A stretch of 64,000 nucleotides of DNA from positions 1 to 64,000 of the IMG/VR virus record IMGVR_UViG_3300047558_000137, one strand, 5' to 3'. Position 1 is the stretch's first letter; each line of letters starts with the position of its first letter. The translations under genes and the position numbers were made by a program. The notes under the pieces are model-generated. The model did no database searches and was not told the DNA's origin. It saw nothing but the letters and a program-made list of their open reading frames with translations. Below are positions 40,033 through 56,564 of the stretch, one piece after another.

Positions 40033-40583
40033 ATACAGTAATTTGTTATTATCCTGGGTCGGGCGGACATAGATATAAAAACTTTTTAACTGACCAAGAA
40101 TATACAACCCCATCTAAAATTTACGATAATAATCAAAAAGATATTTACAATATTAGATATATAACCAACGACACTAAAGTAGTCAATTGTGACAAGACAA
40201 TATTGTTAACACATTGCATGAATAGTTCATTGATTAATGAAAAAATACCAAATAGTCGTATTATTAAAATAGTTGCAAATTTACAACTTAGTTTAGCCCG
40301 CGGGTGGGGCAATTTTTTTAAAGATCTAAAACAATTTGATAGCGATTTGGATAACGCATTTACTACAATTAAATGGCATCTTGAATATTACAATCAATAT
40401 CCAGCTGACATAACAGCAGATGAATTGGTACTAGTGGATATAGATTCAACAACATTTTGCCAAACAATGCGTAGTGAATTAACCAATTACAGCAATCAAA
40501 CATTTAATCGAGCATGGGAAATTTATTCTAAATTTGGCCCGCAAGCACCAGTACTGGATATAGAGCGTAATGAACAAAAGTGA
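40029..40583 (+). CDS. Hypothetical protein (weak sulfotransferase/P-loop-like start)
   Basis: YYPGSGG near the N-terminus; very AT-rich. Confidence 0.55.
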   Translation: MNTVICYYPGSGGHRYKNFLTDQEYTTPSKIYDNNQKDIYNIRYITNDTKVVNCDKTILLTHCMNSSLINEKIPNSRIIKIVANLQLSLARGWGNFFKDLKQFDSDLDNAFTTIKWHLEYYNQYPADITADELVLVDIDSTTFCQTMRSELTNYSNQTFNRAWEIYSKFGPQAPVLDIERNEQK

Positions 40584-41952: not shown

Positions 41953-43318
41953 TAACGAAACCGATTCACAATATAAACGCAGAGTCATTGACATCAAGTC
42001 AAATAGTTTCTGCGGCGCCAAATGGTATAACGCCACTATCTGGTTAGGATCGGGGCAAACAACTAGTTGTCATCATCCTTTGCCACATCAAGTTAGTGTA
42101 GAAGATGTAATAGCAAATCCCAAAGCATTGCACAATACACAAAAGAAAAAAATGGAACGTGAGCAGATGCAACGTGGCGAACGCCCAAGTGGATGCGAGT
42201 ACTGTTGGAAAATTGAGGATATGTACAAGGATCCAAAATTTGCTGGCCGCGATGTTGCAGAGCCCATAAGTGATCGCGTATACAAAACAGTTATATATTC
42301 AGATGAGGATTTAAATGCAGCATTTCGTACTCCAGCAAGCGAGGACACAGACCTCCAAACCCTTGAAATTGCGTTCGATCGCACTTGTCAGTTTGCTTGT
42401 TCTTACTGTAACCCAGCTTTTAGTAGTACTTGGGTTAAGGACATTAAACAACATGGACCCTATACCAACTTGGTTAGTGACGGTAGGAACCACTTTACTC
42501 ACACTCACGATAGTAGCCAATTGTATAAGTTCGGTGATCGTAATCCGTACGTGGATGCGTTCCATGCGTGGTGGGAAAGCGACCTCCACAGAACACTAAA
42601 GGAACTACGCATTACTGGCGGCGAACCTTTGATGTCAGGTGAGACATGGAAGTTGATTGACTGGTTTAAAACTAACAAAGGCAAGAGTACGACACGCCTT
42701 GCTATTAACAGTAATCTTGGTACAGACGTTGATATCGATCGTCTATTAGATAGCATTGATGGTGTAGAAGTGGATCTATACACTAGTAATGAAGCTGTTG
42801 GTTTACAGGCTGAATATATTCGTGACGGGTTGGTATTTGATGACTGGGCTAACAATGTAGAACGTTTACTAGACTCAGGTAAGTTCCGTGGTTTGCATAC
42901 AATGTGTACTATCAACGCACTATGCTTGAGTAGCCTAGACAGTTTCCTCGAAATGGTATACAATTGGAAATTAGAGTACGGCAAGGATTCAATTAACTTT
43001 TCACTAAATATATTACGATTCCCAAGTTTTCAAAGTCCTCTAGTACTGCCCGACGATATCCGAACAGAATACCAGGCTAGACTAGCAACGTTTCTAGTAG
43101 ACCACAAAGGCGACAGCACATTCCACGAATATGAAATTAATCAATTGATTAGATTGATTGATTATCTTGATGTAGTTAAGACTCCACACGAAGGTGCAGT
43201 GGCACAGAGTATACTTCAACGCGACTTTAAGAACTTCTATCAACAGTATGACCAACGTAGAGGTAAAAACTTTGATAACACATTCCCAGAGTTAGCAGAA
43301 TGGTACAAAACACTGTAA
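41939..43318 (+). CDS. Twitch-domain radical SAM protein
   Basis: CGAKW...SCHH, CEYCW, CQFACSYC, TGGEP. Confidence 0.88.
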   Translation: MPKINNETDSQYKRRVIDIKSNSFCGAKWYNATIWLGSGQTTSCHHPLPHQVSVEDVIANPKALHNTQKKKMEREQMQRGERPSGCEYCWKIEDMYKDPKFAGRDVAEPISDRVYKTVIYSDEDLNAAFRTPASEDTDLQTLEIAFDRTCQFACSYCNPAFSSTWVKDIKQHGPYTNLVSDGRNHFTHTHDSSQLYKFGDRNPYVDAFHAWWESDLHRTLKELRITGGEPLMSGETWKLIDWFKTNKGKSTTRLAINSNLGTDVDIDRLLDSIDGVEVDLYTSNEAVGLQAEYIRDGLVFDDWANNVERLLDSGKFRGLHTMCTINALCLSSLDSFLEMVYNWKLEYGKDSINFSLNILRFPSFQSPLVLPDDIRTEYQARLATFLVDHKGDSTFHEYEINQLIRLIDYLDVVKTPHEGAVAQSILQRDFKNFYQQYDQRRGKNFDNTFPELAEWYKTL

Positions 43319-44079
43319 AATCTCGATTTAAGAATTTAGTTGTATCTGGGTGCAGCTTTACCCACGAACCAATTAATGAATGGAATCCTTTTAGTTGGGC
43401 AAATACGTTTGGCCATTTAACTGATATGGTGGTACATAATCTTGCTATGCCCGGTGCCGGGAACGATCATATTTCAAAAAGTATAATTTTGTATATGGAA
43501 AGAAATTCATTTGATCCTGCTGATACGTTAGTATTAGTCATGTGGTCCGGAGTGGGAAGAATCGACTGGATTGCAGATAGATCTAAATCAAATTTTGGTG
43601 ACGAGTATCCGTTTACATATAACTATGATGATAACAATGAATTAGTTTTAGGTGGTAACTGGTGGAATAAAAAGAATCCAAGTCCATTAATAAAAACATT
43701 AATAAACTATTCTAAATATCAATCCGACAGCACGTTTGCATTGCACACTTGGTTGGCCATGCAAAATTTATCTAATTATCTAAAAGTAAACAATTTCGAA
43801 TATTACTACACATCATTCTTAAATTACAACAACACAAAAATCAAAGGTGATGCACTAACTGTCAACTTCTTTAAAGAGTTAGAAAATTTAAATCTATCAA
43901 TTGATTATAATCATTGGCTAGATTTTCAAGATGAAGAATACTATGGCGATTGGTCAAGAATACACAATTTTTTAGATGATGACGGCTTTCATCCTAGGTA
44001 TCCAAAAGCAACTGAAGGTTGGACTAAAGAAATTTTAATACCAAAATTAATTAAACTGGGAATTTTATATAACGTATGA
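43300..44079 (+). CDS. SGNH/GDSL-like hydrolase or acyltransferase
   Basis: VSGCSFT, NLAMPGAGND, DGFHP. Confidence 0.65.
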   Translation: MVQNTVKSRFKNLVVSGCSFTHEPINEWNPFSWANTFGHLTDMVVHNLAMPGAGNDHISKSIILYMERNSFDPADTLVLVMWSGVGRIDWIADRSKSNFGDEYPFTYNYDDNNELVLGGNWWNKKNPSPLIKTLINYSKYQSDSTFALHTWLAMQNLSNYLKVNNFEYYYTSFLNYNNTKIKGDALTVNFFKELENLNLSIDYNHWLDFQDEEYYGDWSRIHNFLDDDGFHPRYPKATEGWTKEILIPKLIKLGILYNV

Positions 44080-45410
44080 CAGATAAAACAGTAGCAGGAT
44101 TTTACGATAATGGGTACGATTACAATGCTCGTGCTCCTTATTTCATTGAGCGTGATCAACTAACTGATGACCAATGGAAAAAATTAACAGAAAGCAAAAC
44201 ATTTTGTATGATGCCATGGGTTCATATGCACGCCTTCCCAGATGGTCGTGCGTATCCTTGCTGTTTAGCAGACTACTGGCATCCCGTCGGCGACCTTCGT
44301 AAGAATACTATGAAGGAAATTTGGAACCAGGACAAGTATCGGCAGATCCGAGTAAACATGTTGGAGGATAAAGAGTGTATAGAATGCACTAAGTGTTATG
44401 AAAGAGAACAACACGGTGCGTTTAGTATGCGTAATGATGCCAATCGTAATTATGGGCAGTACATTAAAGAAGTAGAGTCAACGCTCGAAGATGGTACACA
44501 CCCAGAATTTAAGATTAGATACTGGGATGTTCGTTTTAGTAACCTTTGTAATTTTAGTTGCCGTAGTTGCGGTCCTATTTTTAGTAGCAATTGGTATAAT
44601 GATCACGTAAAGTTATACAACCGTAAACCTGATGTACTGGGCAGAGACATGTTGCGTGTAGAATATACCACAGGCGACGAAGATGACATGATTGCTCAAA
44701 TGATGCCGCATCTACCTTACTTGGAACAAGTTTACTTTGCTGGCGGTGAACCATTAATCATGAAGGAACACTACTTCATGTTAGAAAAGTTAATTGAGCT
44801 AGGTAAAACAGATATACGTTTACAGTACAATACAAATTTTAGTGAACTACGTTTCAAAGACAAACATGTGTTTGACTACTGGAAACATTTTAAAAATGTA
44901 AGTGTGGGCGCAAGCCTAGACGCATCGGGCGCCAGAGCAGAACTGATGCGTAAAGGAACTGATTGGCAGCAAACAGTAGACAATCGTAAACGCATGATGC
45001 AAGAAGTACCGCACGTAGACTTCTATATCAGTGCAACAGTAAGTTCAATGAATGTATTACACGTATTAGATTTCCATAAAGAATGGTGCGACTTGGGATT
45101 AATACAACCTAAAGATTTTAATATTAATATATGCCAGGATAGTAAGTGGTATCGTACTGACATATTTCCCTCATGGTTTAAAGAAGAAATTATAACTCCT
45201 GCTTACCAAGAGCACATTAAATGGCTAGAGCCACAAGACTCATTGTCTCGAGCAACCAACGGATTTAAGAGTGTATTGAGCTTTACTAACGCAACAGATA
45301 ACACCAGTGAATGGTCACGTTTTATTGAAGAAACAAGTAAGTTGGACAAAATTAGAAATGAAAACTTTTGGGATGTATTTCCTGAAATTAAAAAGGCCTT
45401 ATCAAAATGA
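44076..45410 (+). CDS. Twitch-domain radical SAM protein
   Basis: CMMPWVH...PCC, CNFSCRSC, AGGEP, YNTN. Confidence 0.9.
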   Translation: MTDKTVAGFYDNGYDYNARAPYFIERDQLTDDQWKKLTESKTFCMMPWVHMHAFPDGRAYPCCLADYWHPVGDLRKNTMKEIWNQDKYRQIRVNMLEDKECIECTKCYEREQHGAFSMRNDANRNYGQYIKEVESTLEDGTHPEFKIRYWDVRFSNLCNFSCRSCGPIFSSNWYNDHVKLYNRKPDVLGRDMLRVEYTTGDEDDMIAQMMPHLPYLEQVYFAGGEPLIMKEHYFMLEKLIELGKTDIRLQYNTNFSELRFKDKHVFDYWKHFKNVSVGASLDASGARAELMRKGTDWQQTVDNRKRMMQEVPHVDFYISATVSSMNVLHVLDFHKEWCDLGLIQPKDFNINICQDSKWYRTDIFPSWFKEEIITPAYQEHIKWLEPQDSLSRATNGFKSVLSFTNATDNTSEWSRFIEETSKLDKIRNENFWDVFPEIKKALSK

Positions 45411-46627
45411 CATTGCCATCAACTATTTGCATGTTGCCCTGGATGAGTATTGAAGCTAGCCCAATGGGCACAGCTCGTCCCTGCTGTTTGGCTAGAGAGG
45501 AAATCACAGATGAAAATGGAAGTAAGTTTAGTCTCAAGGATACGCCCCTCGAAACCATTTATAAAAGTGAATATATGCAGACTCTTAGACGACAGTTTCG
45601 TGCTGGCGATAAACCAGAAACCTGTCGTCTTTGTTGGGAAGAAGAAGCCGCAGGCCGCGATAGCAAGAGGATTCATAGCCGAGTTCGTCTCAAAGAATTA
45701 TATCAGCAGGTCGATTGGTATAATGACTGTCCTGACCAACTCTGGTTTATTGACCTTAAACTTGGTAACATTTGCAACTTAAAGTGCCGTATATGTGGCA
45801 GTTGGTCTAGCAGTAAGTGGGCCGCAGAAGAAATGGATTACTTACCTAAAGGTGCTAATAAGAAAGAACACATTGCTTATCAATGGTTAAAGCAGGGCAA
45901 GTGGCCCGAAGAAAGCCCCGACTTCTGGGAAAATCTAAAATCACTGTTGCCCAACATCAAGTACTTTGAGTTCACTGGTGGAGAGCCCTGGCTCATTGAA
46001 GAACACTGGGACTTGTTAAAGTATGCAGTAGAAACTGGCGACAGCAAGCATATTGATATTCACTACAATACTAATGCTACTGTGGACCCAATGGGTAAAG
46101 ATAAGTCTTGGGTGTGGGGCGAGTTTGGCCGTGTTGACATTGCATTTAGTATCGACAACGTAGAAGAAAGATTTGAGTACGAACGTTACGGCGCAAATTG
46201 GATTGAAGCAAACAACATCATCAACGACATTCACATGTCTAGATATATTGATAATCCAAACATCACTACTCAGCTTTGCTTTACCATCAACATTCAAAAC
46301 GTTTACTACTTAGATGAGCTGTTGGCCTGGGCAGAAACAAAAGAATTTGGCAGCATCTATTTTAATATGTTACATAGTCCCGATCATATGAGCATACAGC
46401 GCATGACACCAGCGGCCAAGGATTTAGTACTAAACAAACTAAAAACAACATTTTGGTCTACAGACAAGTATCAACAAGAAATAGATAATGTTATACAGTT
46501 TATCGAAAATGGTCCAGGTAGTGATGGTACTGAATTCTTAGAAAAAATGCAGCGCACAGATGCGTATCGTAAACAAAACTTTATGGATACACATCCTGAA
46601 ATAGCTCGCGCAATGGGATACCAATGA
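45407..46627 (+). CDS. Twitch-domain radical SAM protein
   Basis: CMLPW...PCC, CNLKCRIC, TGGEP, YNTN. Confidence 0.9.
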   Translation: MTLPSTICMLPWMSIEASPMGTARPCCLAREEITDENGSKFSLKDTPLETIYKSEYMQTLRRQFRAGDKPETCRLCWEEEAAGRDSKRIHSRVRLKELYQQVDWYNDCPDQLWFIDLKLGNICNLKCRICGSWSSSKWAAEEMDYLPKGANKKEHIAYQWLKQGKWPEESPDFWENLKSLLPNIKYFEFTGGEPWLIEEHWDLLKYAVETGDSKHIDIHYNTNATVDPMGKDKSWVWGEFGRVDIAFSIDNVEERFEYERYGANWIEANNIINDIHMSRYIDNPNITTQLCFTINIQNVYYLDELLAWAETKEFGSIYFNMLHSPDHMSIQRMTPAAKDLVLNKLKTTFWSTDKYQQEIDNVIQFIENGPGSDGTEFLEKMQRTDAYRKQNFMDTHPEIARAMGYQ

Positions 46628-47307
46628 CATCGGCTATAATTGGTTACACTGGATTTATTGGCAAGTATCTGTGTCGTAATACAAAGTTTGATTATTTCTT
46701 TAATTCTGAGAATATCGATGAAATAACAAAAAACAGTTATGACGTAGTCTATTGTGCCGCACCTCATGGTAATAGAATTTTATCAAGTGCTGACCCTGCG
46801 GCCGATTGTGCCAATGTGGAAAAATTAATATCCAGTTTAACTAAACTAGACACCAATAGATTTATATTAATTGGTACTGTTGATGCATTGGTATCTAATA
46901 GAGATTACGGAAAGAATAGAAAACTATTAGAAGATTTTGTTAAACAGAATTTTCATTCATATAACATTGTAAGATTAAGTTCATTGATATTTGATACTAT
47001 ACAAAAAAATCTATTGTATGATTTAAAACATCAACAATGGTTAGAATCAATTAATCCGGAGTCAACACTACAGTGGTATCCGTTAGAAAAAATAATTGAT
47101 GATATTGCCTGGGCAGTTGATAACCGCGTCAACGAACTAAATCTAGTATCTGAACCTGTTAACAATTTAGAAATTATTCAGCAATTTGCACCCAACTGTC
47201 TTGCCAGTATCTCAGAGAAGAAGGATGCAACGCATTACAATATCACACCATATCGTTTTAGTAAAAAAGAAATATTTTCTTACATTGAAAGATATATGCA
47301 GCAATGA
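46624..47307 (+). CDS. NAD-dependent epimerase/dehydratase-like protein
   Basis: IIGYTGFIG Rossmann motif, YGKNR, IVRL. Confidence 0.7.
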   Translation: MTSAIIGYTGFIGKYLCRNTKFDYFFNSENIDEITKNSYDVVYCAAPHGNRILSSADPAADCANVEKLISSLTKLDTNRFILIGTVDALVSNRDYGKNRKLLEDFVKQNFHSYNIVRLSSLIFDTIQKNLLYDLKHQQWLESINPESTLQWYPLEKIIDDIAWAVDNRVNELNLVSEPVNNLEIIQQFAPNCLASISEKKDATHYNITPYRFSKKEIFSYIERYMQQ

Positions 47308-48203
47308 TAGACCTGGTACTACGTCCCAATGAATTTACTAGTTTTACTTCTTTTTATCTAGAGCAGTTCTGGAGAAAGTTTTTTAACATATCATACTATG
47401 ATCCAACTAAAACATATGATAAGAATAGAACACTATTTGCAGTATGGTGGCAAACCGTAGATTCGGATCCCTGGCCAGCTCATATGAGAGATTTGGGCTA
47501 TAAGGTTGTGGTTGATAATATATGGGAAAGGCAACAGTTTCGTACAGATTACCATTGGATAGAACACAAATATTCAATGTGTTGGAATGAAAGTCTGTGG
47601 TGGGAAAGTCTAGGCTATGCTGATTATGTTCCACAAAGAAATTTAGAGTATCTTGCATTTATGCAGATGCGCTTGGCAAAGCCCGAGAGAGATAAGATAC
47701 ACAAAGAGCTTGATCCATTCTTAGATAGAATGTTATGGAGTTACTTAGCAAAGAATCAAACACTTGATGACGACACAGACGATAAGCTGTCGGGCCAACG
47801 ATATATGCATCCAAATTGGTACAACAAAACCTATTGCAGTATAGTAGTAGAAACCTATGTAAATGGCGGGCTACATGCGTCGGAGAAGACATATAAACCT
47901 ATAGCATACTATCACCCTTTTATGACTATAAGTGTTCCTGGTACACTGGCATTTTTAAAAGAGGCTGGGTTTGAAACATTTGATAATTTATTTGATGAAA
48001 GCTACGATAACATACATAATTTAGATTTACGATTAGATATTATAAAATCAAATTTGGAATCTATTAGATTAGATAAATCATATGATAAACTAACATTAGA
48101 TAAAATAGAATATAATCATAATAAATTTTTTAATAAACAAGAAACCTTAACATCAATGGAACAAGAAATAGTTAATCCATTATTAGAATATGCAGAAGCC
48201 TGA
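47304..48203 (+). CDS. Hypothetical protein, possibly GT-B-like glycan-related
   Basis: SIVVET...SEKTYKPI...GFETFDNLFDESYD C-terminal pattern. Confidence 0.55.
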   Translation: MIDLVLRPNEFTSFTSFYLEQFWRKFFNISYYDPTKTYDKNRTLFAVWWQTVDSDPWPAHMRDLGYKVVVDNIWERQQFRTDYHWIEHKYSMCWNESLWWESLGYADYVPQRNLEYLAFMQMRLAKPERDKIHKELDPFLDRMLWSYLAKNQTLDDDTDDKLSGQRYMHPNWYNKTYCSIVVETYVNGGLHASEKTYKPIAYYHPFMTISVPGTLAFLKEAGFETFDNLFDESYDNIHNLDLRLDIIKSNLESIRLDKSYDKLTLDKIEYNHNKFFNKQETLTSMEQEIVNPLLEYAEA

Positions 48204-49497
48204 TACACTATGCATGGCGCCGTGGACGCACACATACCTAAGCCCACAAACAGAACGTAGGATGTGTTGTGCCAGCCGAGAACCTGCACAAAACTTTCAG
48301 CAGTATATCGACACTAGCGCCGGCACCGGGCGATATATACCTATCACTTTGGATGAACACTGGAATGGAGAGCACATGAGGTCCGTGCGCCTACGTATGA
48401 TGCGTGGGGAAATCCTCCCAGAGTGCGAAGTATGTAATGATCGACTGTTGAATACTTCCGTTTACCGCAGTTATTTTAATCAACTGTTTGGTCATAAGTA
48501 CAATGAAGCAATGGCAAATACAGCCGAAGATGGTACGACTACATTGCAGCCAGTTAGTTGGGATTACCGTTTTAGTAATCTCTGTAACTTCAAATGTCGC
48601 ATGTGTGGGGACATGTTAAGCAGTGCTTGGGAGTCCGAGCAACGCCAACACAACATGATCAATTGGCACGATCCAAAGAACAATTGGATGAAGCCTGAGA
48701 TCAAAAAACAAATTGAAAGTTTTCAAGAAGGTCAAATAGAAGCCGAGTTCTCAAAGGCAGTTGAAGAACACAGAGTTGAAGAAGTATACTGGGTAGGTGG
48801 CGAGCCACTAATGTATGAACAACACTGGCGTTACATGGCTCGCATAGTTGAACTAGGAGATGGACCAAATGTTTACGCTCGTTATAACACCAACTTATCT
48901 CGCGTTAATTACAAGGGTATCAATTTGTATAGTGATATTCTTAGCCGGGTTCGTGACTGGCAAATATGCGCTTCAATTGATGGCACTGGGAAAATCGGGG
49001 AGTATATCAGAACCGGACTCGATTATGATCAATGGCTTAGAAACTTCCGTGCAGGAGTTGAGATCGCAACTCACAGACGTCAGATGCGAATTGACTTTAC
49101 ACTCACACTGCCAGGAATGTTCGAAGTTGAACGAATACAACAGCTCGCAGACAAGTTAAATGTAGACGTACTTGCTAAAGTAATTTTTAGTTTTAGCCCG
49201 GACATAGTTATGTCACCTTTAGCACTACCCAGAGAACTTCTAGATCCCTGGATAGACGAAACACTAAGAGAATTCGATTCAATTGGCACGAGCCCGTTAA
49301 AGGATATCCTTGTCCAGCTAAAAACTAGACCTACATTTGAAGAACAATGGCCCGACGAATACCGTACGGCTATTGCAAAAGGCAAAGCTCGTGTGTTAAA
49401 ATTAGAGCAAATACGTACACAGTCAATTACTATGACCGATATATTAAGTCAACGTCCGGACGTATTAGAATGGTGGATGAGCATTGAAACAATTTAA
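48190..49497 (+). CDS. Twitch-domain radical SAM protein
   Basis: CMAPWTH...MCC, CNFKCRMC, VGGEP, YNTN, ASIDG. Confidence 0.9.
   Translation: MQKPDTLCMAPWTHTYLSPQTERRMCCASREPAQNFQQYIDTSAGTGRYIPITLDEHWNGEHMRSVRLRMMRGEILPECEVCNDRLLNTSVYRSYFNQLFGHKYNEAMANTAEDGTTTLQPVSWDYRFSNLCNFKCRMCGDMLSSAWESEQRQHNMINWHDPKNNWMKPEIKKQIESFQEGQIEAEFSKAVEEHRVEEVYWVGGEPLMYEQHWRYMARIVELGDGPNVYARYNTNLSRVNYKGINLYSDILSRVRDWQICASIDGTGKIGEYIRTGLDYDQWLRNFRAGVEIATHRRQMRIDFTLTLPGMFEVERIQQLADKLNVDVLAKVIFSFSPDIVMSPLALPRELLDPWIDETLREFDSIGTSPLKDILVQLKTRPTFEEQWPDEYRTAIAKGKARVLKLEQIRTQSITMTDILSQRPDVLEWWMSIETI
48869..49159 (+). CDS. Putative nested +1-frame protein with N-terminal TM and coiled coil
   Basis: AGGAG 9 nt before ATG 48869; +1 stops are dense on both flanks and absent inside. 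Confidence 0.5.
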   Translation: MFTLVITPTYLALITRVSICIVIFLAGFVTGKYALQLMALGKSGSISEPDSIMINGLETSVQELRSQLTDVRCELTLHSHCQECSKLNEYNSSQTS

Positions 49498-49705
49498 AAT
49501 CAAAAACAGCATGATACCAGAAGTTACCCGATGGTGTCTGGAGAATTTAGGTAAAGAAAATATTCGTTGGTGGGTGTCACCTATTGGTACAGGTAACTGG
49601 AATGGTACCACATCAAAGTTTGAAAATGATATACAGTTGTTTATTGATGTTACTGAAGAAGAAGAAACCAACTTAACATATTTTGTTTTACGATATGATC
49701 AATAA
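49484..49705 (+). CDS. Hypothetical protein
   Basis: 73-aa ORF coupled to neighbours. Confidence 0.6.
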   Translation: MKQFKIKNSMIPEVTRWCLENLGKENIRWWVSPIGTGNWNGTTSKFENDIQLFIDVTEEEETNLTYFVLRYDQ

Positions 49706-50771
49706 AGTTATTGTTACACTACGTAACCCGCTGGCAAAAAATGAAACGTTAGACTACATAATTGAAGTAAACGATAGTCCAATGGGTTCTCGTTGGTACA
49801 TGGCCCTATATGATCTATTAAAGCAAAACCGGTATCTTGAAAAGAACTTTTGCTTTTTAGGTTTTCCTGACAGTGCCCGCGACCTAGAATATATTTGTCA
49901 AGAACTAGAATGGGCCGTTAAGCAGATTAATAGTTTCTTTGATCCCAGTGACTACTACATAGGACAGGCCTTTACGCCAGACAATCTGCGAGAAGGACTC
50001 GATCCTAATCAAGCGATGTTCAACGTATTGCACAATCACTTTGAGCACTTACAAGGTACAGTTTGGGGTCTAAGTGAATGGTACAAACGTGCCGACTATG
50101 AAACTAAGTTTGCCATTAGACAACTAAACAATCTATGTCACGAAGCAGAAAGCCTACTACTAAGTCAACGCAAACAGGTAGAAGCACCAGACTGGGTTAG
50201 ACCCAGTCAAATAACTACATTCTTAAATGCACAGCGATTGGAATTCCCCGATGAACTTAAAACGACTTTTGAAGAAACGAGATATGATCGTAAATTCGGT
50301 CAGGTATACTTACATTGGACCCAAATTGGGAAGACGCTATACGAGGTATTTAGAGATGAAGGGGGCGTGGCGGTGGATCAAGCCACTTGCGATGCTATTA
50401 CTCACTTACGATACTATTCGGGTGAATTTGATATTGAGTGGGCGCAGGACGTTGTCTATGGTGGACCGCATCCTTGGCACACCCGAGAAATTGATTTATT
50501 CAGATCTTGGCTTGAACAAAACAGATTCAACTTGGTGGACAGAAATTACAATTTTGGATATCACGCCGTCGGCCAAGTTAATCTTGCAGAGTCTTTTGGA
50601 ACAACCAACCACCGTGAAGTTTGGCCCATACTCTCTAGACACCTCGATATCTATAGCATACAAGCCGGCAGTGCCAAGTCAGTATACGACTATAACTGGA
50701 CAGACGTAGATTACTACCAACAACAAATAGAAAGATTGAAACCCGGATATGATTATAGTAGCAGGCGGTGA
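49695..50771 (+). CDS. Hypothetical protein
   Basis: About 358 aa; ATG 49695 preferred over TTG 49683. Confidence 0.75.
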   Translation: MINKVIVTLRNPLAKNETLDYIIEVNDSPMGSRWYMALYDLLKQNRYLEKNFCFLGFPDSARDLEYICQELEWAVKQINSFFDPSDYYIGQAFTPDNLREGLDPNQAMFNVLHNHFEHLQGTVWGLSEWYKRADYETKFAIRQLNNLCHEAESLLLSQRKQVEAPDWVRPSQITTFLNAQRLEFPDELKTTFEETRYDRKFGQVYLHWTQIGKTLYEVFRDEGGVAVDQATCDAITHLRYYSGEFDIEWAQDVVYGGPHPWHTREIDLFRSWLEQNRFNLVDRNYNFGYHAVGQVNLAESFGTTNHREVWPILSRHLDIYSIQAGSAKSVYDYNWTDVDYYQQQIERLKPGYDYSSRR

Positions 50772-51570
50772 TAGTTTTATATTTGGATCTGAATTAGCAG
50801 ATCAAACTGGTGCCCGCGCAAGCATGAATACTATTCCTGCCTTGCTTAGTAAAAGCATTGGGGCCGAATATACGTGTCTAGCAGTTCCCGGTAATGCCAA
50901 CAATGCTATTGCTAGACAGGTAATGGACTATTGCGAAACATACAAAGAAAATAAAATGTTTGTTTTTGTTATGTGGACATTTGTACACAGATACGATTTC
51001 AGATTCAATTACTCCACTGGGCGTAAAACAAGTCCCTGGCATAGCATAAACTTATGGGATATAGTAGACGATGTTGCAACACTTAAAAAAGAATTTGCAA
51101 ATCAAAATCAAAATGTTTTTGATGAATTAGTAAACGATAGATACCGAGCTGATTCAACTGGATTATCTGAGTTTTCTAAAATGTTTTACAAGCATGTTGG
51201 TAATAGTGAATACTATGAATTTTATACTAGTCTTAAAGAAATTGTGTTTTTGCAGAATTATCTAGACATAAACAATATACCATTTATGTTTACCTTTGCT
51301 GACATACATTTTAAAGACAGCGATCAAATTAAGCGTCATTTAACTGACCCCAGTATGCGTACACTTTACAATCAAATCAAGTGGGACCACTGGTATGAAT
51401 TTCCTGCAGGAACTAAAAAAGGCGAAACATTGGATCCAAGAGGTTTTTATCAGTGGGCTGTGGAGAATAAATATCAAGTAGGCACTACACATCCGCTAGA
51501 ACAAGCACACGCAGATGCTGCCCAATTAATGCAGGAAAAATTCAATGAAATGGTTAAAAAATCTCTATAA
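50749..51570 (+). CDS. SGNH/GDSL-like hydrolase or acyltransferase
   Basis: GGDSFIFG, AVPGNAN, THP. Confidence 0.65.
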   Translation: MIIVAGGDSFIFGSELADQTGARASMNTIPALLSKSIGAEYTCLAVPGNANNAIARQVMDYCETYKENKMFVFVMWTFVHRYDFRFNYSTGRKTSPWHSINLWDIVDDVATLKKEFANQNQNVFDELVNDRYRADSTGLSEFSKMFYKHVGNSEYYEFYTSLKEIVFLQNYLDINNIPFMFTFADIHFKDSDQIKRHLTDPSMRTLYNQIKWDHWYEFPAGTKKGETLDPRGFYQWAVENKYQVGTTHPLEQAHADAAQLMQEKFNEMVKKSL

Positions 51571-51646
51571 CCGAATTGTGCTCGAAATTCGTTATCGTAA
51601 AAAACTCAAAGAGCTACGTAAACGCGATCCATTTATCTATAAATGA
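51545..51646 (+). CDS. Small basic protein (33 aa, ends DPFIYK; below the track cut-off)
   Basis: MKWLKNLYNRIVLEIRYRKKLKELRKRDPFIYK fills the gap and its TGA overlaps the next ATG. Confidence 0.6.
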   Translation: MKWLKNLYNRIVLEIRYRKKLKELRKRDPFIYK

Positions 51647-52305
51647 TTAAACACATACTAACTGTCGGCGACAGTTTTACCTACGGGGAAGAACTTGAAA
51701 ACAGAGACAATGCATATCCCTATTATCTTGCTAAAGGGTTAAAAGCTGAAGTAGTTAATCTTGGACAGCCTAGTGGTGGTAATCGTCAAATGGTACGCAA
51801 AGTAATAGATTATGTTCTAAGTGGTGAACCGTTAGATCTAGTAATCATTGGGTGGACAAGTCCCGGGCGTATAGAGTTTGCAGATGCCAATGGTGTGTTT
51901 GATATATGGCCCGGCTACGGGGGAGACCTGTTTAGACGTGACGGGCAAGAGTGGCGACTAGAATTACTAGACTACATTAACAAGCATCACGATCCAGAAT
52001 ATCTATATAGACAACATCTTAACGATATTATTCTGTTACAGAGTTTTTTACAACAGCGTAACATACGTTATCTAATGTTAAAGGTAGTTGGTAATGAGTA
52101 TTATCACAATACCTACTACAATGAAGATGCAGTATTGCCTAAACAAATTGATGCAACACACTTTGTGGGATGGCCCAATCAAGGGATGGCAGAATGGACA
52201 AACGGATGTCGACGTGGACCACGTGGGCATTTTCTCGAAGAAGGTCACAGAAAGGTGACAGCAAAACTTTATGAACATATTAGGAATCTCGGCTGGCTTT
52301 CATGA
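51643..52305 (+). CDS. SGNH/GDSL-like hydrolase or acyltransferase
   Basis: VGDSFTYG, NLGQPSGGN, GHF. Confidence 0.7.
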   Translation: MIKHILTVGDSFTYGEELENRDNAYPYYLAKGLKAEVVNLGQPSGGNRQMVRKVIDYVLSGEPLDLVIIGWTSPGRIEFADANGVFDIWPGYGGDLFRRDGQEWRLELLDYINKHHDPEYLYRQHLNDIILLQSFLQQRNIRYLMLKVVGNEYYHNTYYNEDAVLPKQIDATHFVGWPNQGMAEWTNGCRRGPRGHFLEEGHRKVTAKLYEHIRNLGWLS

Positions 52306-53761
52306 TGCAGCCGCAACAGTATTAGACGATGATGGGAACATCTTATTTGCCTCACACAGCGAGCGTTACAGTAAGCAGAAGTCTGATGCTAATTTTTGCA
52401 GCCCTCTTATTCGTGAGCTTGAGCAGTACAATCCAATTGGAACCGCAGCCTACTATGAGCGCCCATTGGTTAAACAGCTACGACAGCTTTATGCAGGACA
52501 GGGATTTGAATGGAACAAACTATCTACAAAGAAGTTGGTACATGATCAAATTGGTTATGCCAAGTGGTGGGACCTTAGCAAGTACAGAAGTTTCAACCAC
52601 CATCTTAGTCATGCAGCCGCTGGATTCCAGACTAGCAGTTTTGATAGGGCAACGGTCGTTGTAATCGATGCAATAGGTGAATTTGAAACAGTAACCATAT
52701 GGGGTGCAGAATATGATAGCACAGGTCGAGCAGTTTATAAAAAGTTGTGGCAACGCAATTACCCGCATAGCATTGGACTCTTTTACACTGGAGCTACTAA
52801 GCGGGTTGGCCTTAAGCCACTAGACGAAGAATACATTCTAATGGGCATGGCCGCCTATGGCAACCGCGGATTCAGCGATTTACTAAAGATGGACTTAATT
52901 GACAATGAATGGGAAATTAAATTCAAACAGAATATGCACACAGGGCTAACATTAAAGTATCTAAATGATGCAACAGCAGATTTTGATGTAGCAGCCGCGG
53001 CCCAAGATCTAGTAGAAGATTTAATACTTAACGTTATGCTTAGAGCCAAACAGTTTAAGTGGAGTGACAATTTAGTTTACATGGGCGGGTGCGCCCTTAA
53101 TTGTAGTGCCAATGCACGTATAGGAGCTTACTTTGATAATATATGGATTATGCCTAATCCTGGTGACGCTGGTAGCAGCCTTGGTGCTGCCGCTTTGGCT
53201 TATGGGCGTAGAATTAACTGGACCAGTGCTTATCTCGGGCATAATATTCCTGGCAATTATCCCGTTATGGAGCTTTTGGATAGGCTACTTGCTGAACAGA
53301 TTGTGGGAGTGGCAAGTGGACGTGCCGAATTCGGCCCCCGCGCACTCGGAAACCGTAGCCTCCTTGCGGACCCTCGAGGCAGCGAGATTAAGGAGAGAGT
53401 AAATGACATTAAACGTAGGCAACAGTTCAGACCCTTTGCGCCAGTTATTTTGGAAGAGTTGGCTGACACTTACTTTGATATGCCTCGCGGTTGGGGTAAC
53501 AGTAGGTATATGCAAACAGTCGCTCGTTGTAGGTTTCCTGACCTATTTCCTGCTATCGTTCATCATGACGGCACTAGTCGTGTACAAACTGTGCCGCGTG
53601 ATGGATCGGGAATACGAGAGCTGTTAGAACGATGGTTTGTAATGACTGACTGCCCTATGCTGCTCAATACAAGCCTGAACATACGTGGCGAACCAATGGT
53701 TAATGATCGTGCAGATGCAGATCGATTTGAAAAATTATATGGTATAAAGGTCTGCTCATGA
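52271..53761 (+). CDS. Carbamoyltransferase (NodU/CmcH family)
   Basis: GFHDAAA, HSERY, HHLSHAAAG, GDAGSSLGAA, GRAEFGPRALGNRSLLADP, RPFAP, LLNTSLN. Confidence 0.93.
   Translation: MNILGISAGFHDAAATVLDDDGNILFASHSERYSKQKSDANFCSPLIRELEQYNPIGTAAYYERPLVKQLRQLYAGQGFEWNKLSTKKLVHDQIGYAKWWDLSKYRSFNHHLSHAAAGFQTSSFDRATVVVIDAIGEFETVTIWGAEYDSTGRAVYKKLWQRNYPHSIGLFYTGATKRVGLKPLDEEYILMGMAAYGNRGFSDLLKMDLIDNEWEIKFKQNMHTGLTLKYLNDATADFDVAAAAQDLVEDLILNVMLRAKQFKWSDNLVYMGGCALNCSANARIGAYFDNIWIMPNPGDAGSSLGAAALAYGRRINWTSAYLGHNIPGNYPVMELLDRLLAEQIVGVASGRAEFGPRALGNRSLLADPRGSEIKERVNDIKRRQQFRPFAPVILEELADTYFDMPRGWGNSRYMQTVARCRFPDLFPAIVHHDGTSRVQTVPRDGSGIRELLERWFVMTDCPMLLNTSLNIRGEPMVNDRADADRFEKLYGIKVCS
53133..53402 (+). CDS. 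Putative nested +1-frame 89-aa two-TM protein in the carbamoyltransferase gene
   Basis: AGGAG 6 nt before TTG; two hydrophobic helices. Confidence 0.55.
   Translation: MIIYGLCLILVTLVAALVLPLWLMGVELTGPVLISGIIFLAIIPLWSFWIGYLLNRLWEWQVDVPNSAPAHSETVASLRTLEAARLRRE
53403..53627 (+). CDS. Putative nested +1-frame 74-aa two-TM protein in the carbamoyltransferase gene
   Basis: TAAGGAG 7 nt before ATG; TAA-ATG junction with the preceding nested ORF. Confidence 0.6.
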   Translation: MTLNVGNSSDPLRQLFWKSWLTLTLICLAVGVTVGICKQSLVVGFLTYFLLSFIMTALVVYKLCRVMDREYESC

Positions 53762-54486
53762 CGCAAACTAGATGGGATTACACTACGTCCCAAAGTAAAT
53801 GGCATTTTAATACACACGCATCATCTGCGCCCGGTGTTGATAATTTTATACATGTTTGCAGATTTAATGCAGATTTTCCAGAGGCATGTACCTTAGCCGA
53901 AGGTGGATTAAAACCAAATAACTGGAGCACAGGGGTGCTTCGTCCTTGGCTTAAAAATCAAGAAGTCGGGCCGGATCAAGCAGACTTAGTACGTGCAGGA
54001 GCCGACCCTAATGGCGAAATATACGACAGGGCACCAGCAGATCATGTACCATTGTTTTGTGCTATATCGGACTATCTTGGAATGGAAAAGCCTATCATTA
54101 AATATCATGTTCAACGTACAGGACAATATGTAGTTACACATATAGATGATTTTTTTCAAACTGGATTCAATCGTTGGAATTGGTTAGAACGCAATAGAGG
54201 TGAGCCGTTAACAGAACCAAGAGATGTAAAAATAAGAAGATTTGCAATTATGTTAGATGATTGGAAATTAGGACAAATATTTCAAGTTGGTACAGCAAAC
54301 TGGCACCAATGGCGTGCGGGAGATTGCATTACATGGGATTGGTATAATACACCGCACTCTACAGCAAATCTAGGATGGGCGCCTCGCCATATGTTACAAA
54401 TCACAGGTGCAGAAACACTGCGTACACAAGAAGTATTAGCACAAGCTAATATCAACAAAATTATAGATATAAAGGAACTGTTATGA
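53758..54486 (+). CDS. Cupin / 2OG-Fe(II) oxygenase-like protein
   Basis: HIDD (HxD) and PHSTANLG...RHMLQITG. Confidence 0.55.
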   Translation: MTQTRWDYTTSQSKWHFNTHASSAPGVDNFIHVCRFNADFPEACTLAEGGLKPNNWSTGVLRPWLKNQEVGPDQADLVRAGADPNGEIYDRAPADHVPLFCAISDYLGMEKPIIKYHVQRTGQYVVTHIDDFFQTGFNRWNWLERNRGEPLTEPRDVKIRRFAIMLDDWKLGQIFQVGTANWHQWRAGDCITWDWYNTPHSTANLGWAPRHMLQITGAETLRTQEVLAQANINKIIDIKELL

Positions 54487-55283
54487 AAACGCCACAACGT
54501 ATTCTTATTATGGGCTTACCCGGTGCAGGTAAGACTTACTTAGCACAGCACATACTAGATCATTTACAGGCTGAGAAAAAACGTGTAGGTTGGTTAAACG
54601 CTGACGATGTACGTAAGAAGTATAACGATTGGGACTTTAGTGTTGATGGTCGCATACGTCAAAGTCATCGTATGCGTGAACTAGCAGACTCAATGGCGGA
54701 TATGGATTATGTGATCTGTGACTTTGTTGCACCACTAGTGGAAATGCGTAACAACTTTAAAGCAGATTGGACTGTTTGGGTAGACACGATTGATAAGGGA
54801 CGGTTTGAAGATACAAACAAGGCCTTTATTGCTCCTGATATCTACGACTTTAGAGTAACAGAACAGAGATCAGAGTGGTGGGGCGAATTTATTGCCGCAC
54901 ACATACTAGACAATCGCAGACGTCCTGTGTTCGATTGGCAAAAGGAAACAGTACAGATGTTAGGACGTTGGCAACCTTGGCATGCCGGTCATCGTGCATT
55001 GTTTGAACGTGCTATTGCCAAGACTGGACAGGTAGTAATTCAAATACGTGACTGCCAAGGTTGGCAAGGATCAAACCCATTTGCTATCGAACAGGTTAAG
55101 AGCTTTATTCGTAGAGACTTGGATCCCATCTATCAAGGACAGTATGAAATCCAAGTGGTGCCCAACATTGTAAACATTACCTATGGTCGAGATGTGGGCT
55201 ACAAGATAGAGCAAGAAATGTTTGATGAATCAATTACAGATATCTCTGCAACAAAGATTCGTCGGAGCATGGGTCTTGAGTGA
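54483..55283 (+). CDS. Adenylylsulfate-kinase-like domain fused to a nucleotidyltransferase domain
   Basis: GLPGAGKT, LNADDVR, then GRWQPWHAGH (HxGH). Confidence 0.8.
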   Translation: MKTPQRILIMGLPGAGKTYLAQHILDHLQAEKKRVGWLNADDVRKKYNDWDFSVDGRIRQSHRMRELADSMADMDYVICDFVAPLVEMRNNFKADWTVWVDTIDKGRFEDTNKAFIAPDIYDFRVTEQRSEWWGEFIAAHILDNRRRPVFDWQKETVQMLGRWQPWHAGHRALFERAIAKTGQVVIQIRDCQGWQGSNPFAIEQVKSFIRRDLDPIYQGQYEIQVVPNIVNITYGRDVGYKIEQEMFDESITDISATKIRRSMGLE

Positions 55284-56158: not shown

Positions 56159-56470
56159 ATGAAAGTTCAAACTAAAACCGGTTACATCCACAAAGGCAAC
56201 TACGGTGCTGAATACACTGCCGATGGCGAAGTAATTGCCAAAGCCCGTGTCAAGTCCGGCAAGCGTGGTCGTCCTGCTAAAGTAGAAGCACCTGCTTTCT
56301 GCACTAACATTACTAACGATCTGTTTGGTCGTGTCCCACTTACTGCCCCATCGGGCATCAAAGGTCGTGTTGTTATTGGTAAGGCCAGCGCCAACGCTGT
56401 CTACGCTGATGACACCGAAGAATTGGTTGTAGACGAAGTCTTCAGCCCGTTCAAAACCGTTAACAGCTGA
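56159..56470 (+). CDS. Hypothetical early protein (KRGRP AT-hook-like motif)
   Basis: TAAGGA Shine-Dalgarno before ATG 56159. Confidence 0.65.
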   Translation: MKVQTKTGYIHKGNYGAEYTADGEVIAKARVKSGKRGRPAKVEAPAFCTNITNDLFGRVPLTAPSGIKGRVVIGKASANAVYADDTEELVVDEVFSPFKTVNS

Positions 56471-56564
56471 AAATAATTTTGTTCACGCAAAAATTAAATT
56501 CAAATCTGTTATACAATAGAGACTCACTAGTTTTAACAACAGCAATTTTTTTAAGGAGTTCCAA

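What the first reader, a model, noticed from the sequence alone, without database searches (positions are those of the whole stretch)
48855..49159. Nested TM + coiled-coil protein (i-spanin-like topology) in a radical SAM gene
AGGAG-N9-ATG (48869) gives MFTLVITPTYLALITRVSICIVIFLAGFVTGKYAL...INGLETSVQELRSQLTDVRCEL...HCQEC. The heptad-like polar segment is not explained by T-ending codon bias. I count four +1 stops in the ~65 nt before the ORF, none in its ~100 codons, and six in the ~100 nt after. Embedded spanin genes (Rz/Rz1) are the known precedent for nested phage membrane genes; no o-spanin lipobox partner was seen.
Basis: partly seen in the sequence, partly recalled or inferred. Interest (0 to 1): 0.65.

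Follow-up and report, generated by a model that had tools for sequence, protein, structure and literature searches.

The report
Real nested membrane-protein gene, not spanin
A 96-codon reading frame hidden in the +1 frame of a jumbo-phage radical-SAM enzyme gene is a genuine, conserved gene for a small single-pass membrane protein, which even survives as a free-standing gene where the enzyme gene has decayed; it does not look like a spanin, and its function is unknown.

Summary
AGGAG-N9-ATG (48869) opens a stop-free +1 frame of 100 codons (48857-49156) inside a SPASM/radical-SAM gene (48190-49497) of a 374-kb T4-like jumbo phage. On this sequence alone the case is weak: six longer +1 runs exist in the window, and the three I tested are not conserved.

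Comparison with orthologues decides it. Among 126 distinct orthologues (59-84% host identity, synonymous sites near saturation), 90 keep the frame open (1 stop against 378 expected in the core). The same 90 also keep:
- the GGAG and the ATG;
- T at host third positions through the hydrophobic segment;
- a 4-3-4-3 heptad pattern.

In 16 orthologues that lack the ORF, all these signals sit at expectation (77 stops against 71). In other contigs (L083, L082, L081) the radical-SAM frame has decayed to a relic with stops or is gone, yet the small gene persists free-standing, once behind an 11/12 sigma-70 promoter.

The product is an N-terminal transmembrane helix followed by an amphipathic heptad helix. 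Charge distribution predicts N-out/C-in, the opposite of an i-spanin. No lipobox partner recurs within ±6 kb in 80 loci, and no protein family matches.

Verdict: a real overprinted gene and a new protein family. The spanin reading is not supported.

The parts
48190..49497 (+). Host gene: 435-aa SPASM plus radical-SAM enzyme. It is one of five radical-SAM paralogues between 40570 and 49497.
   Evidence: Pfam PF13186 and PF04055. The overlap region aligns without a break to paralogue 44076-45410, so the host frame is the ancestral one here.
48854..48856 (+). TAG that closes the +1 frame just upstream of the nested ORF.
   Evidence: A stop occupies this column in 61% of the first 80 orthologues.
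48855..48859 (+). Shine-Dalgarno AGGAG, formed by host codons Leu-Gly-Asp.
   Evidence: The host Gly codon here is GGA 70, GGG 15, GGC 4, GGT 1 in the 90 ORF-bearing orthologues. In the 16 ORF-less ones it is GGA 1, GGC 6, GGT 6, AGA 2, GCC 1. GGAG is present in 68/90 against 1/16.
48860..48862 (+). First in-frame ATG. It abuts the SD, so it is a poor initiator; it would give a 99-aa product.
   Evidence: An ATG is present here in 68/90 ORF-bearing orthologues.
48869..49159 (+). Nested CDS from the likely start (ATG nine bases after the SD) to TAA: 96 aa, in the +1 frame of the host.
   Evidence: An ATG sits at this position in 64/90 ORF-bearing orthologues against 1/16 ORF-less ones. The frame is open in 90 of 126 distinct orthologues.
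48899..48955 (+). Hydrophobic core of the transmembrane helix (best 19-residue window).
   Evidence: Kyte-Doolittle 19-mer mean is 2.49 in the window copy and averages 2.49 over the 75 sequences scored (72 orthologue products of at least 70 aa plus the 3 free-standing homologues). Host third-position T is 1.43x expectation in ORF-bearing lineages and 0.97x in ORF-less ones. The AlphaFold2 helix spans residues 3-41.
48992..49015 (+). Gly/Ser/Pro-rich break (residues 42-49), peculiar to this genome's copy.
   Evidence: The AlphaFold2 model breaks here with pLDDT below 50 at residues 43-45. The window copy carries Ser where the consensus has the heptad Leu at three positions. The consensus-like orthologue from L067 folds as one helix, residues 3-94.
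49016..49150 (+). C-terminal amphipathic helix. The best 28-residue heptad window is 49028-49111.
   Evidence: AlphaFold2 helix at residues 50-94. In the window copy, a/d positions are 0.88 hydrophobic against 0.05 elsewhere, z = 4.1 against shuffles.
49085..49120 (+). Cys/His cluster (C-x4-H-x-H-C-x2-C) in the variable tail.
   Evidence: Cys is present in only about half to two-thirds of orthologues at these columns, and the tail is absent from the 72-77-aa short forms, so it is not a core feature.
49157..49159 (+). TAA stop of the nested ORF.

Best explanation
Window 48869-49159 is a genuine protein-coding gene that arose by overprinting in the +1 frame of the conserved core of a radical-SAM enzyme gene in a family of T4-like jumbo phages.

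Shown:
- The frame, its SD/ATG, the hydrophobicity of its N-terminal segment and a heptad pattern in its second half are held by selection across orthologues whose synonymous sites are near saturation.
- All these signals vanish together in lineages that lack the ORF.
- The gene persists as a free-standing gene after the host frame decays.

Inferred:
- It is translated by internal initiation at AGGAG-N9-AUG on the radical-SAM mRNA, as an independent protein of about 96 aa.
- It inserts into the inner membrane through its N-terminal helix with a very short acidic N-tail outside and the C-terminus inside (N-out/C-in).
- It presents a cytoplasmic amphipathic heptad helix that self-associates or binds a partner.
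- The variable tail is dispensable.

The transmembrane segment is the part kept even in truncated natural variants. I therefore think its activity is centred on the membrane helix: a small membrane-targeted effector in the manner of holins/antiholins or phiX174 E, or else a membrane tether. It is not an i-spanin. The biochemical role remains unknown. The confidence given applies to the gene being real and encoding a single-pass membrane protein with a heptad helix; the specific functional guess is much less certain.
For: - Frame conservation: 80 orthologues at 72-84% host identity, with a median four-fold-site difference of 0.63. In the wider set of 126 distinct sequences, 68 are long, 22 short, 20 truncated and 16 absent.
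- Stop avoidance is specific to frame and region: 16 against 293 in the core, 1.04 outside, and +2 frame 1.45.
- Internal control: the ORF-bearing group has 1 stop against 378 expected, GGAG in 68/90, ATG at the start position in 64/90, and third-position T at 1.43x (transmembrane segment), 2.47x (heptad a/d) and 0.27x (polar sites). The ORF-less group has 77 against 71, GGAG 1/16, ATG 1/16, and T at 0.97x, 0.72x and 0.86x.
- Method control: three longer +1 ORFs in neighbouring genes are not conserved.
- Synonymous variability is 0.92 in the overlap against 1.02 outside.
- Free-standing homologues: L081 625-915, L082 1730-2038 and L083 3085-3342. They share 40-53% identity with nested products.
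- Decay of the host frame: in L083 the radical-SAM frame over the gene is a relic with stops. The small protein is 67.5% identical to the nested ORF of L153, whose host gene is intact, while the host frame is only 39% identical.
- L081 has a TTGACA-17-TAAAAT promoter and a hairpin upstream.
- Structure: helix 3-94 at pLDDT 74 for a consensus-like member; helices 3-41 and 50-94 for the window copy.
- Topology and heptads.
Against: - There is no expression evidence of any kind; all sequences are metagenomic.
- The window's own copy departs from the consensus, with three heptad Leu positions as Ser and a Pro-containing break, so this particular copy could be drifting.
- About 29% of sampled orthologues carry a truncated or absent ORF, so the gene is dispensable in some lineages.
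- The topology rests on the positive-inside rule alone.
- The nested-frame identity test does not discriminate: 0.43 observed against 0.32 codon-randomised in ORF-bearing lineages, but also 0.40 against 0.33 in ORF-less ones.
- The function is inferred from architecture only.
Confidence: 0.8

Rival explanations
1. It is an i-spanin. The protein would be an inner-membrane-anchored, periplasmic coiled-coil protein that bridges to an outer-membrane partner and fuses the two membranes at lysis.
For: The architecture is an N-terminal transmembrane segment plus a helical heptad domain. Several orthologues give weak hits to Rz-like spanin PHROGs, with a best E of 5e-4 for phrog_214 and eight Rz-like families among the top 25. 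Cys residues occur in the tail of many members. The nearest cultured relatives infect Gram-negative hosts, and T4-like phages scatter their lysis genes.
Against: The predicted orientation is N-out/C-in in 77% of members and never the reverse, and this includes the unconstrained free-standing homologues. No recurrent lipobox ORF exists within ±6 kb in 80 loci or anywhere credible in the window. The PHROG hits cover only the transmembrane segment plus the first helix, are not significant, and are absent for the free-standing homologues. The short forms (72-77 aa) and truncated forms (58-65 aa) would be too short to cross a periplasm. The tail Cys residues are not conserved.
Confidence: 0.06
2. 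It is a membrane tether or adaptor for the surrounding radical-SAM/carbamoyltransferase/kinase modification cluster. The cytoplasmic helix would recruit one or more of these enzymes to the inner membrane, where a lipid-linked or envelope substrate sits.
For: The gene is embedded in one cluster enzyme. Free-standing copies in L082 and L083-L085 still sit directly downstream of a radical-SAM paralogue of the 40570 type. In L083-L085 a 65-aa two-transmembrane protein lies next to it. The cluster content is given. The predicted C-in orientation puts the helix where soluble enzymes are.
Against: The proximity can be explained purely by descent, since the gene was born inside the cluster. L081 shows it between an unrelated 128-aa gene and a dCMP deaminase, with its own promoter. 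The gene outlives its own host enzyme. No interaction was tested.
Confidence: 0.2
3. It is not a gene. The open frame would be a by-product of host amino-acid sequence, local codon bias, or an RNA-level constraint.
For: Long +1 ORFs are common in this window and most are meaningless. T-ending codons automatically yield hydrophobic +1 residues. There is no expression evidence.
Against: With the same host protein (about 74% pairwise identity), the lineages without the ORF show stops at expectation (77 against 71) and no SD, ATG or third-position-T signals. The depletion is specific to the +1 frame. The third-position pattern alternates T-rich and T-poor with heptad spacing, which codon bias cannot produce. 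Free-standing copies keep the small protein while the radical-SAM frame decays.
Confidence: 0.04
4. The frame is reached by programmed +1 ribosomal frameshifting, which would give a fusion of the N-terminal half of the radical-SAM enzyme to a membrane anchor rather than an independent small protein.
For: Two metagenomic gene calls (P0009 at 309 aa, P0023 at 148 aa) read from the radical-SAM frame straight into the nested frame. Many orthologues have an A-run (GGA AAA AAT G) at the junction.
Against: A +1-frame stop lies immediately upstream in most orthologues, and the SD plus ATG are selected. The A-run is not conserved; the window has GGA CCA AAT. Free-standing homologues start at the equivalent Met with their own SD and promoter. 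P0009 and P0023 are single clusters and are best explained by indels or sequencing errors.
Confidence: 0.03

Closest known systems
phiX174 lysis gene E nested in scaffolding gene D
   Same: Both are ORFs of about 90-100 codons lying wholly inside an unrelated, older gene in the +1 frame. Both arose by overprinting. Both products are small proteins with an N-terminal transmembrane helix and a C-terminal part that tolerates much change. In both, hydrophobic residues come from T-rich host third positions. The orientation (N-terminus out, C-terminus in the cytoplasm) is the one predicted here. What I state about E comes from established knowledge, not from a test here.
   Different: There is no sequence similarity. 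phiX174 has a 5.4-kb genome under strong coding pressure, whereas this genome is 374 kb. E has no heptad helix and acts through a conserved Pro-containing transmembrane segment on MraY, and no such target is shown here. Jumbo T4-like phages are expected to lyse with holin and endolysin.
Lambda Rz1 embedded in Rz, and i-spanins in general (PMC6139136)
   Same: It is a phage gene fully embedded in the +1 frame of another gene. The product's architecture (N-terminal transmembrane segment plus helical heptad domain) resembles an i-spanin on paper. Weak PHROG hits to Rz-like families exist.
   Different: In lambda the embedded gene is the lipoprotein partner of its own host gene, whereas here the host is an enzyme of unrelated function. 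The predicted orientation is opposite to class II i-spanins. There is no o-spanin. The protein is much shorter, with natural forms of 58-77 aa.
Single-gene lysis proteins of ssRNA phages (for example MS2 L), which evolved repeatedly by overprinting
   Same: These are small membrane proteins born de novo in alternative frames of conserved genes, and they are lineage-restricted and fast-evolving. Here the nested product is 30-52% identical between orthologues while the host is 72-84% identical.
   Different: Those occur in tiny RNA genomes and have a demonstrated lytic function. Here the genome is a large dsDNA one and the function is unknown.
phi29 p16.7 (membrane-anchored early replication organiser)
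   Same: Both have an N-terminal membrane anchor followed by a cytoplasmic coiled coil. Three members gave weak hits to the GP16.7-like PHROG (E 0.03). The free-standing homologue in L081 has an early-type sigma-70 promoter.
   Different: p16.7 carries a C-terminal DNA-binding domain that has no counterpart here. The hits are not significant. The resemblance is architectural only.
Holins and antiholins
   Same: Both are small, membrane-helix-centred proteins with a charged cytoplasmic C-terminus. Two closely spaced Met codons (M-x-K/Q-M) in many orthologues recall dual-start motifs.
   Different: There is no adjacent endolysin. Canonical one-helix (class III) holins are N-in/C-out. The dual Met is partly dictated by the host codons and is not kept in the free-standing homologues. 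No family match was found.

Membership tests
Overprinted (fully nested, out-of-frame) protein-coding gene | The alternative frame stays open across orthologues whose synonymous sites have diverged. | tested here: met
   90 of 126 distinct orthologues keep an ORF of at least 68 codons. The median four-fold-site difference is 0.63.
Overprinted (fully nested, out-of-frame) protein-coding gene | Stop-codon depletion is specific to that frame and that stretch, beyond what host amino acids and codon usage predict. | tested here: met
   16 against 293 in the core and 1.04 outside. The +2 frame is at 1.45. ORF-less lineages show 77 against 71. Neighbouring decoy ORFs give 0.78-0.87.
Overprinted (fully nested, out-of-frame) protein-coding gene | Translation signals (SD and start codon) are conserved through host-synonymous choices. 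| tested here: met
   GGAG in 68/90 against 1/16. ATG at the 48869-equivalent position in 64/90 against 1/16. An ATG at one of the three start-region positions in 89/90 ORF-bearing orthologues, although also in 15/16 ORF-less ones, so that count does not discriminate.
Overprinted (fully nested, out-of-frame) protein-coding gene | Protein-level selection acts in the new frame. | tested here: met
   Host third positions are site-specifically T-rich or T-poor, matching the transmembrane segment and heptad positions, only in ORF-bearing lineages. After loss of the host frame, the small protein stays 67.5% identical while the host frame drops to 39% with stops. The pairwise-identity test was not discriminating.
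Overprinted (fully nested, out-of-frame) protein-coding gene | The product is actually made. | not testable with these tools
   The sequences are metagenomic only, with no transcript, ribosome-profiling or peptide data.
i-spanin (Rz-like) | Class II inner-membrane protein: N-in, C-out (PMC6139136). | tested here: not met
   Positive-inside rule: Lys/Arg 0.41 on the N side against 1.83 on the C flank. C exceeds N in 77% of members and the reverse never occurs. Free-standing homologues give 0-1 against 2-4. This is a prediction, not a measurement.
i-spanin (Rz-like) | A cognate o-spanin lipoprotein gene is embedded, overlapped or nearby (up to about 1 kb in the survey of PMC6139136). | tested here: not met
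   No credible lipobox ORF exists in the window. No lipobox ORF recurs at any position within ±6 kb of the gene in 80 loci; the maximum is 7/80, and those are antisense. The rest of the 374-kb genome was not available.
i-spanin (Rz-like) | A helical, coiled-coil-prone soluble domain long enough to span the periplasm. | tested here: inconclusive
   A helical heptad domain is present. However, it is only about 45-65 residues, shorter in natural variants, and predicted to be cytoplasmic.
i-spanin (Rz-like) | Sequence membership in a known spanin family. | tested here: not met
   The best hit is E 5e-4 for one member to phrog_214. Most members and all free-standing homologues have none. There are no Pfam hits.
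Holin | Small membrane protein with a charged C-terminus that is lethal on induction, triggers on membrane depolarisation and releases endolysin. | not testable with these tools
   The size, transmembrane segment and charged tail fit. No endolysin neighbour was found in the window. The function is untested.

The most novel reading that the evidence does not exclude
The sampled sequences record the full course of a de novo gene. It was born by overprinting inside the conserved fold of a radical-SAM enzyme of a 374-kb phage, where genome compression is not a motive. It was fixed and refined into a protein with a transmembrane segment and a coiled coil. It was lost in some lineages. In others it became independent, as a free-standing, self-promoted gene after its host gene decayed. 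The product would found a new family of small jumbo-phage membrane effectors whose activity lies in the transmembrane helix.
Probability: 0.5. Interest if true: 0.8.

Novelty: new variant of a known kind. Interest (0 to 1): 0.7.

Why it matters
Fully nested out-of-frame genes are textbook features of tiny phages, and of the lambda Rz/Rz1 pair, where they are explained by coding economy or by partnership. Here one sits in the catalytic core of an enzyme gene in a jumbo phage. It is invisible to gene callers: only 6 calls exist among 5.8 billion clustered proteins, all on contig fragments.

The comparative signal is clean, with a built-in negative control and natural examples of the gene becoming free-standing. 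This bears on three points:
- Large phage genomes hide conserved overlapping genes.
- The case offers a tractable natural model for how overprinted genes are born and become independent.
- It adds an uncharacterised small membrane protein family, present in at least a hundred environmental jumbo-phage contigs, to the candidates for host-envelope manipulation.

It also shows that ORF length or shuffle statistics on a single genome are unreliable. Three longer decoy ORFs next door failed the same test.

Tried and rejected
- Nucleotide and protein searches of cultured-phage records. There was no nucleotide match. The host protein has only relatives at 22-25% identity, and the nested protein has none.
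- Family and structure-sequence searches of the nested family: Pfam, PDB sequence profile (only spurious ubiquitin-repeat matches) and PHROGs. No significant family was found.
- Homodimer prediction: no verdict (score 0.01). This is not evidence either way.
- Fold search of the models was not run, because a single long helix gives meaningless matches.
- Nested-frame pairwise identity against codon-randomised sequences. It is elevated in both ORF-bearing and ORF-less groups, so it is confounded by relatedness and I discarded it as evidence.
- Synonymous-shuffle p-values on the window alone. The null is miscalibrated, so they serve only as a pointer.
- Rooting with the window's paralogues. The outgroup branches are about 10 substitutions per site. 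The result places the truncated and absent forms inside a derived clade, which suggests secondary loss, but it is unreliable.
- Search for second copies of the small gene in the flanks of ORF-less loci: none found.
- Search for viral contigs carrying the L081-type free-standing gene: none found.
- A weak promoter-like site at 48761-48790 (9/12). There is no synonymous constraint there, so I did not pursue it.
- Frameshift fusion: rejected (see rival explanations).
Full report
1. What is in the sequence

The finding's coordinates and details are correct. AGGAG lies at 48855-48859. ATG codons lie at 48860 and, nine bases after the AGGAG, at 48869. The +1 frame of the host gene is free of stops from 48857 to 49156 (100 codons). 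It is bounded by TAG at 48854 and TAA at 49157, with four +1 stops in the 65 nt before and six more in the 100 nt after.

The host gene, 48190-49497, encodes a 435-aa protein with an N-terminal SPASM-type Cys cluster and a radical-SAM core. It is one of five radical-SAM paralogues between 40570 and 49497. The cluster also holds an epimerase-like gene, a NodU/CmcH-type carbamoyltransferase, an APS-kinase-like P-loop protein and a GDSL-like protein, and it lies downstream of baseplate and tail-fibre genes.

The window is part of IMG/VR contig UViG_3300047558_000137, which is 374,314 bp. Its gp46-like nuclease is closest (48%) to Pseudomonas phage PA5oct, Sinorhizobium phage Phosso and Agrobacterium phage Atu_ph07. 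This makes it a distant T4-like jumbo phage, probably of a Gram-negative host.

2. Is it more than chance?

From this genome alone the answer is unclear. The 100-codon run is only the seventh longest +1 run in the window; the others are 160, 150, 112, 112, 111 and 111 codons. A synonymous-codon shuffle of the gene gives P = 0.0014 for a run this long and 0.0002 for this stretch being open. The same null gives p <= 0.01 for 6 of 49 genes, so it is not trustworthy.

3. Orthologues decide it

A scan of IMG/VR returned more than 600 matches, of which 80 were kept, at 72-84% protein identity. Four-fold degenerate sites differ at a median of 0.63 between them, which is close to saturation.

In a codon alignment, the +1 frame is open for at least 92 codons in 59 of the 80 orthologues. 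It is open for 72-77 codons in 14, and broken earlier in 7.

I derived the expected number of +1 stops from each orthologue's own amino-acid pairs and pooled codon usage:
- First 76 codons of the ORF: 16 observed against 293 expected (0.055).
- Last 24 codons: 63 against 172 (0.37).
- Rest of the gene: ratio 1.04.
- A subset of 32 sequences with pairwise four-fold difference of at least 0.5: 14 against 114.
- The +2 frame over the same stretch: 1.45.

As a control on the method, three longer +1 ORFs in neighbouring genes (50227-50709, 45450-45782, 52329-52664) gave inside ratios of 0.78-0.87. They are open in only 0-4 orthologues. Synonymous variability dips modestly over the overlap, to 0.92 against 1.02, as expected when sites are saturated.

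4. An internal negative control

A second scan centred on a divergent orthologue raised the set to 126 distinct host sequences, at 59-84% identity to the window. By length of the nested ORF they divide into 68 long, 22 short, 20 truncated (38-65 codons) and 16 absent, where a stop falls inside the hydrophobic segment. Host-protein identity within the groups is the same, at about 0.74.

| Signal | 90 ORF-bearing sequences | 16 ORF-less sequences |
|---|---|---|
| +1 stops in the core, observed vs expected | 1 vs 378 | 77 vs 71 |
| Gly codon forming the SD | GGA 70, GGG 15, GGC 4, GGT 1 | GGA 1, GGC 6, GGT 6, AGA 2, GCC 1 |
| GGAG present | 68 of 90 | 1 of 16 |
| ATG at the 48869-equivalent position | 64 of 90 | 1 of 16 |
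| Third-position T, hydrophobic segment | 1.43x expectation | 0.97x |
| Third-position T, eight heptad a/d sites | 2.47x | 0.72x |
| Third-position T, nine intervening polar sites | 0.27x | 0.86x |

The eight heptad a/d sites are spaced 4-3-4-3. An ATG at one of the three start-region positions is present in 89 of 90 ORF-bearing sequences, but also in 15 of 16 ORF-less ones, so that count does not discriminate.

The groups were defined by stops only. The SD, start-codon and third-position signals are therefore independent confirmation. Codon bias or an RNA structure cannot explain an alternating T-rich/T-poor pattern that appears only where the frame is open.

The truncated group keeps the T enrichment of the hydrophobic segment (1.38x) but not the heptad pattern (0.99x).

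5. The gene outlives its host

An exhaustive profile search of 1.84 billion representative proteins found 38 hits. Most are the same nested ORF, called on short contig fragments. In the 5.8-billion-cluster database it was called only six times.

Three hits are free-standing genes with no overlapping long ORF: L081 625-915, L082 1730-2038, and L083 3085-3342, which recurs in L084 and L085. They are 40-53% identical to nested products, with E values down to 7e-14.

In L083 the frame that corresponds to the radical-SAM protein is still recognisable. Host residues 210-287 align at 36-40% identity with E 4e-7 to 7e-9, but the frame is interrupted by several stops.

L153 carries an intact host gene (70.6% identical to the window's) with the nested ORF inside it. 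Compared with L153, the L083 gene is 67.5% identical in the small-protein frame but only 39% identical in the radical-SAM frame. Selection there acts on the small protein alone.

In L081 no significant host-frame similarity is left. That gene has a TTGACA-17-TAAAAT promoter match (11 of 12) about 60 nt upstream, a hairpin after the preceding gene, and its own GAGGG-type SD.

The overlap region of the host aligns colinearly with paralogue 44076-45410 and lies inside the Pfam radical-SAM match. The enzyme frame is therefore the older one and the small gene is the overprint. Rooting with the paralogues places the truncated and absent forms in a derived clade, which suggests secondary loss. The outgroup branches are far too long to rely on this.

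6. The product

The nested products are only 30-52% identical to the window's but share an architecture:
- A short, usually acidic N-tail of 4-8 residues.
- A hydrophobic helix, with a mean Kyte-Doolittle 19-mer score of 2.49 and a minimum of 1.53.
- A Gly-Lys/Arg junction.
- A helix with heptad periodicity: a/d positions are 0.85 hydrophobic against 0.15 elsewhere, and z exceeds 2 against shuffles in 75% of members.
- A variable tail, often basic and sometimes carrying a C-x7-C-x2-C motif, which is missing from the short forms.

AlphaFold2 folds a consensus-like member as one continuous helix, residues 3-94, at pLDDT 74.

The window's own copy is atypical. Three conserved heptad Leu positions are Ser, and a Gly/Ser/Pro stretch breaks the model into helices 3-41 and 50-94, at pLDDT 65.

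Lys/Arg counts are 0.41 before the membrane helix and 1.83 in the 15 residues after it. The order is never reversed, and the three unconstrained free-standing homologues give 0-1 against 2-4. By the positive-inside rule the protein is N-out/C-in, with the heptad helix in the cytoplasm.

7. What it is not, and what it may be

i-spanins are class II (N-in, C-out) proteins with periplasmic coiled coils and a cognate lipoprotein gene that is embedded, overlapping or nearby (PMC6139136). Here the evidence runs against that:
- The predicted orientation is the opposite.
- No lipobox ORF is credible in the window, and none recurs within ±6 kb in 80 loci.
- Pfam, PDB and PHROG searches give no significant family. 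The weak Rz-like PHROG hits cover only the transmembrane segment plus the first helix in a few members.
- Natural forms of 58-77 aa are too short to bridge a periplasm.

I therefore reject membership. I rate "works like a spanin" at about 6%.

The membrane helix is the feature retained in every variant, including the truncated ones. On that basis I favour an activity centred on the helix in the inner membrane, with the cytoplasmic heptad helix serving oligomerisation or partner binding. The closest analogue in gene anatomy and protein layout is phiX174 E nested in D. Holins/antiholins and phi29 p16.7 are looser architectural parallels. A tether for the neighbouring modification enzymes is the main functional rival.

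None of these functions was tested. A homodimer prediction returned no verdict. Literature searches found no description of this gene.

8. Verdict

The spanin analogy is not supported. This is a new protein family and a new example of an overprinted phage gene. It is unusual in sitting inside an enzyme core in a jumbo genome, and in having natural descendants that became free-standing genes.

Noticed in passing
window 40570-55283: A large auxiliary cluster lies downstream of the tail-fibre genes. It contains five radical-SAM paralogues (40570, 41939, 44076, 45407, 48190; three with an N-terminal SPASM-type Cys cluster), an epimerase-like gene (46624), a GDSL/DUF6071 protein (51643), a NodU/CmcH-type carbamoyltransferase (52271) and an APS-kinase-like P-loop protein (54483). 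It looks like a sugar or polysaccharide modification pathway.
   Followed up: partly
window 50227-50709, 45450-45782, 52329-52664 (tested); 39446-39895, 40901-41194, 30094-30405, and +1 runs in 8101-8400 and 11885-12511 (untested): There are other long +1 ORFs or runs with low shuffle p-values. The three I tested are not conserved in orthologues. The others were not examined.
   Followed up: partly
P0009 (309 aa) and P0023 (148 aa), metagenomic gene calls: These are natural or artefactual indel variants in which the N-terminal half of the radical-SAM protein reads straight into the nested frame. One of them switches at or near a junction where many orthologues carry an A-run (GGA AAA AAT G).
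   Followed up: partly
L083 2714-2911 (also L084, L085): A 65-aa predicted two-transmembrane protein lies directly upstream of the free-standing homologue and downstream of a 40570-type radical-SAM gene. It has no family match.
   Followed up: no
window 60644-61336: A phage-encoded Bax inhibitor-1/YccA-family membrane protein (PF01027, E 2.6e-53). It is an unusual host-like membrane protein for a phage and may be relevant to control of membrane proteolysis or cell death.
   Followed up: no
window 16044-27305: A single ORF of 3,753 codons lies in the baseplate/tail-fibre region. It was not analysed.
   Followed up: no
whole window: The T4 late-promoter octamer TATAAATA is absent from all 64 kb on both strands, against 8.3 ± 2.8 expected. 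Either this phage uses a different late promoter or the motif is avoided.
   Followed up: no
window 58998-59822 (-), 56460-57068 (-), 57078-57623 (-): There are very long antisense ORFs of 274, 202 and 181 codons. The first lies opposite the HNH-endonuclease-like gene 58563-59834 and the other two opposite the AAA-ATPase gene 56565-57665. Conservation was not tested.
   Followed up: no
window 48992-49015 against alignment A1: The window's own nested copy has Ser at three heptad positions where the consensus has Leu, plus a Pro. This makes it an outlier among the long forms. It may reflect relaxed constraint in this genome.
   Followed up: partly
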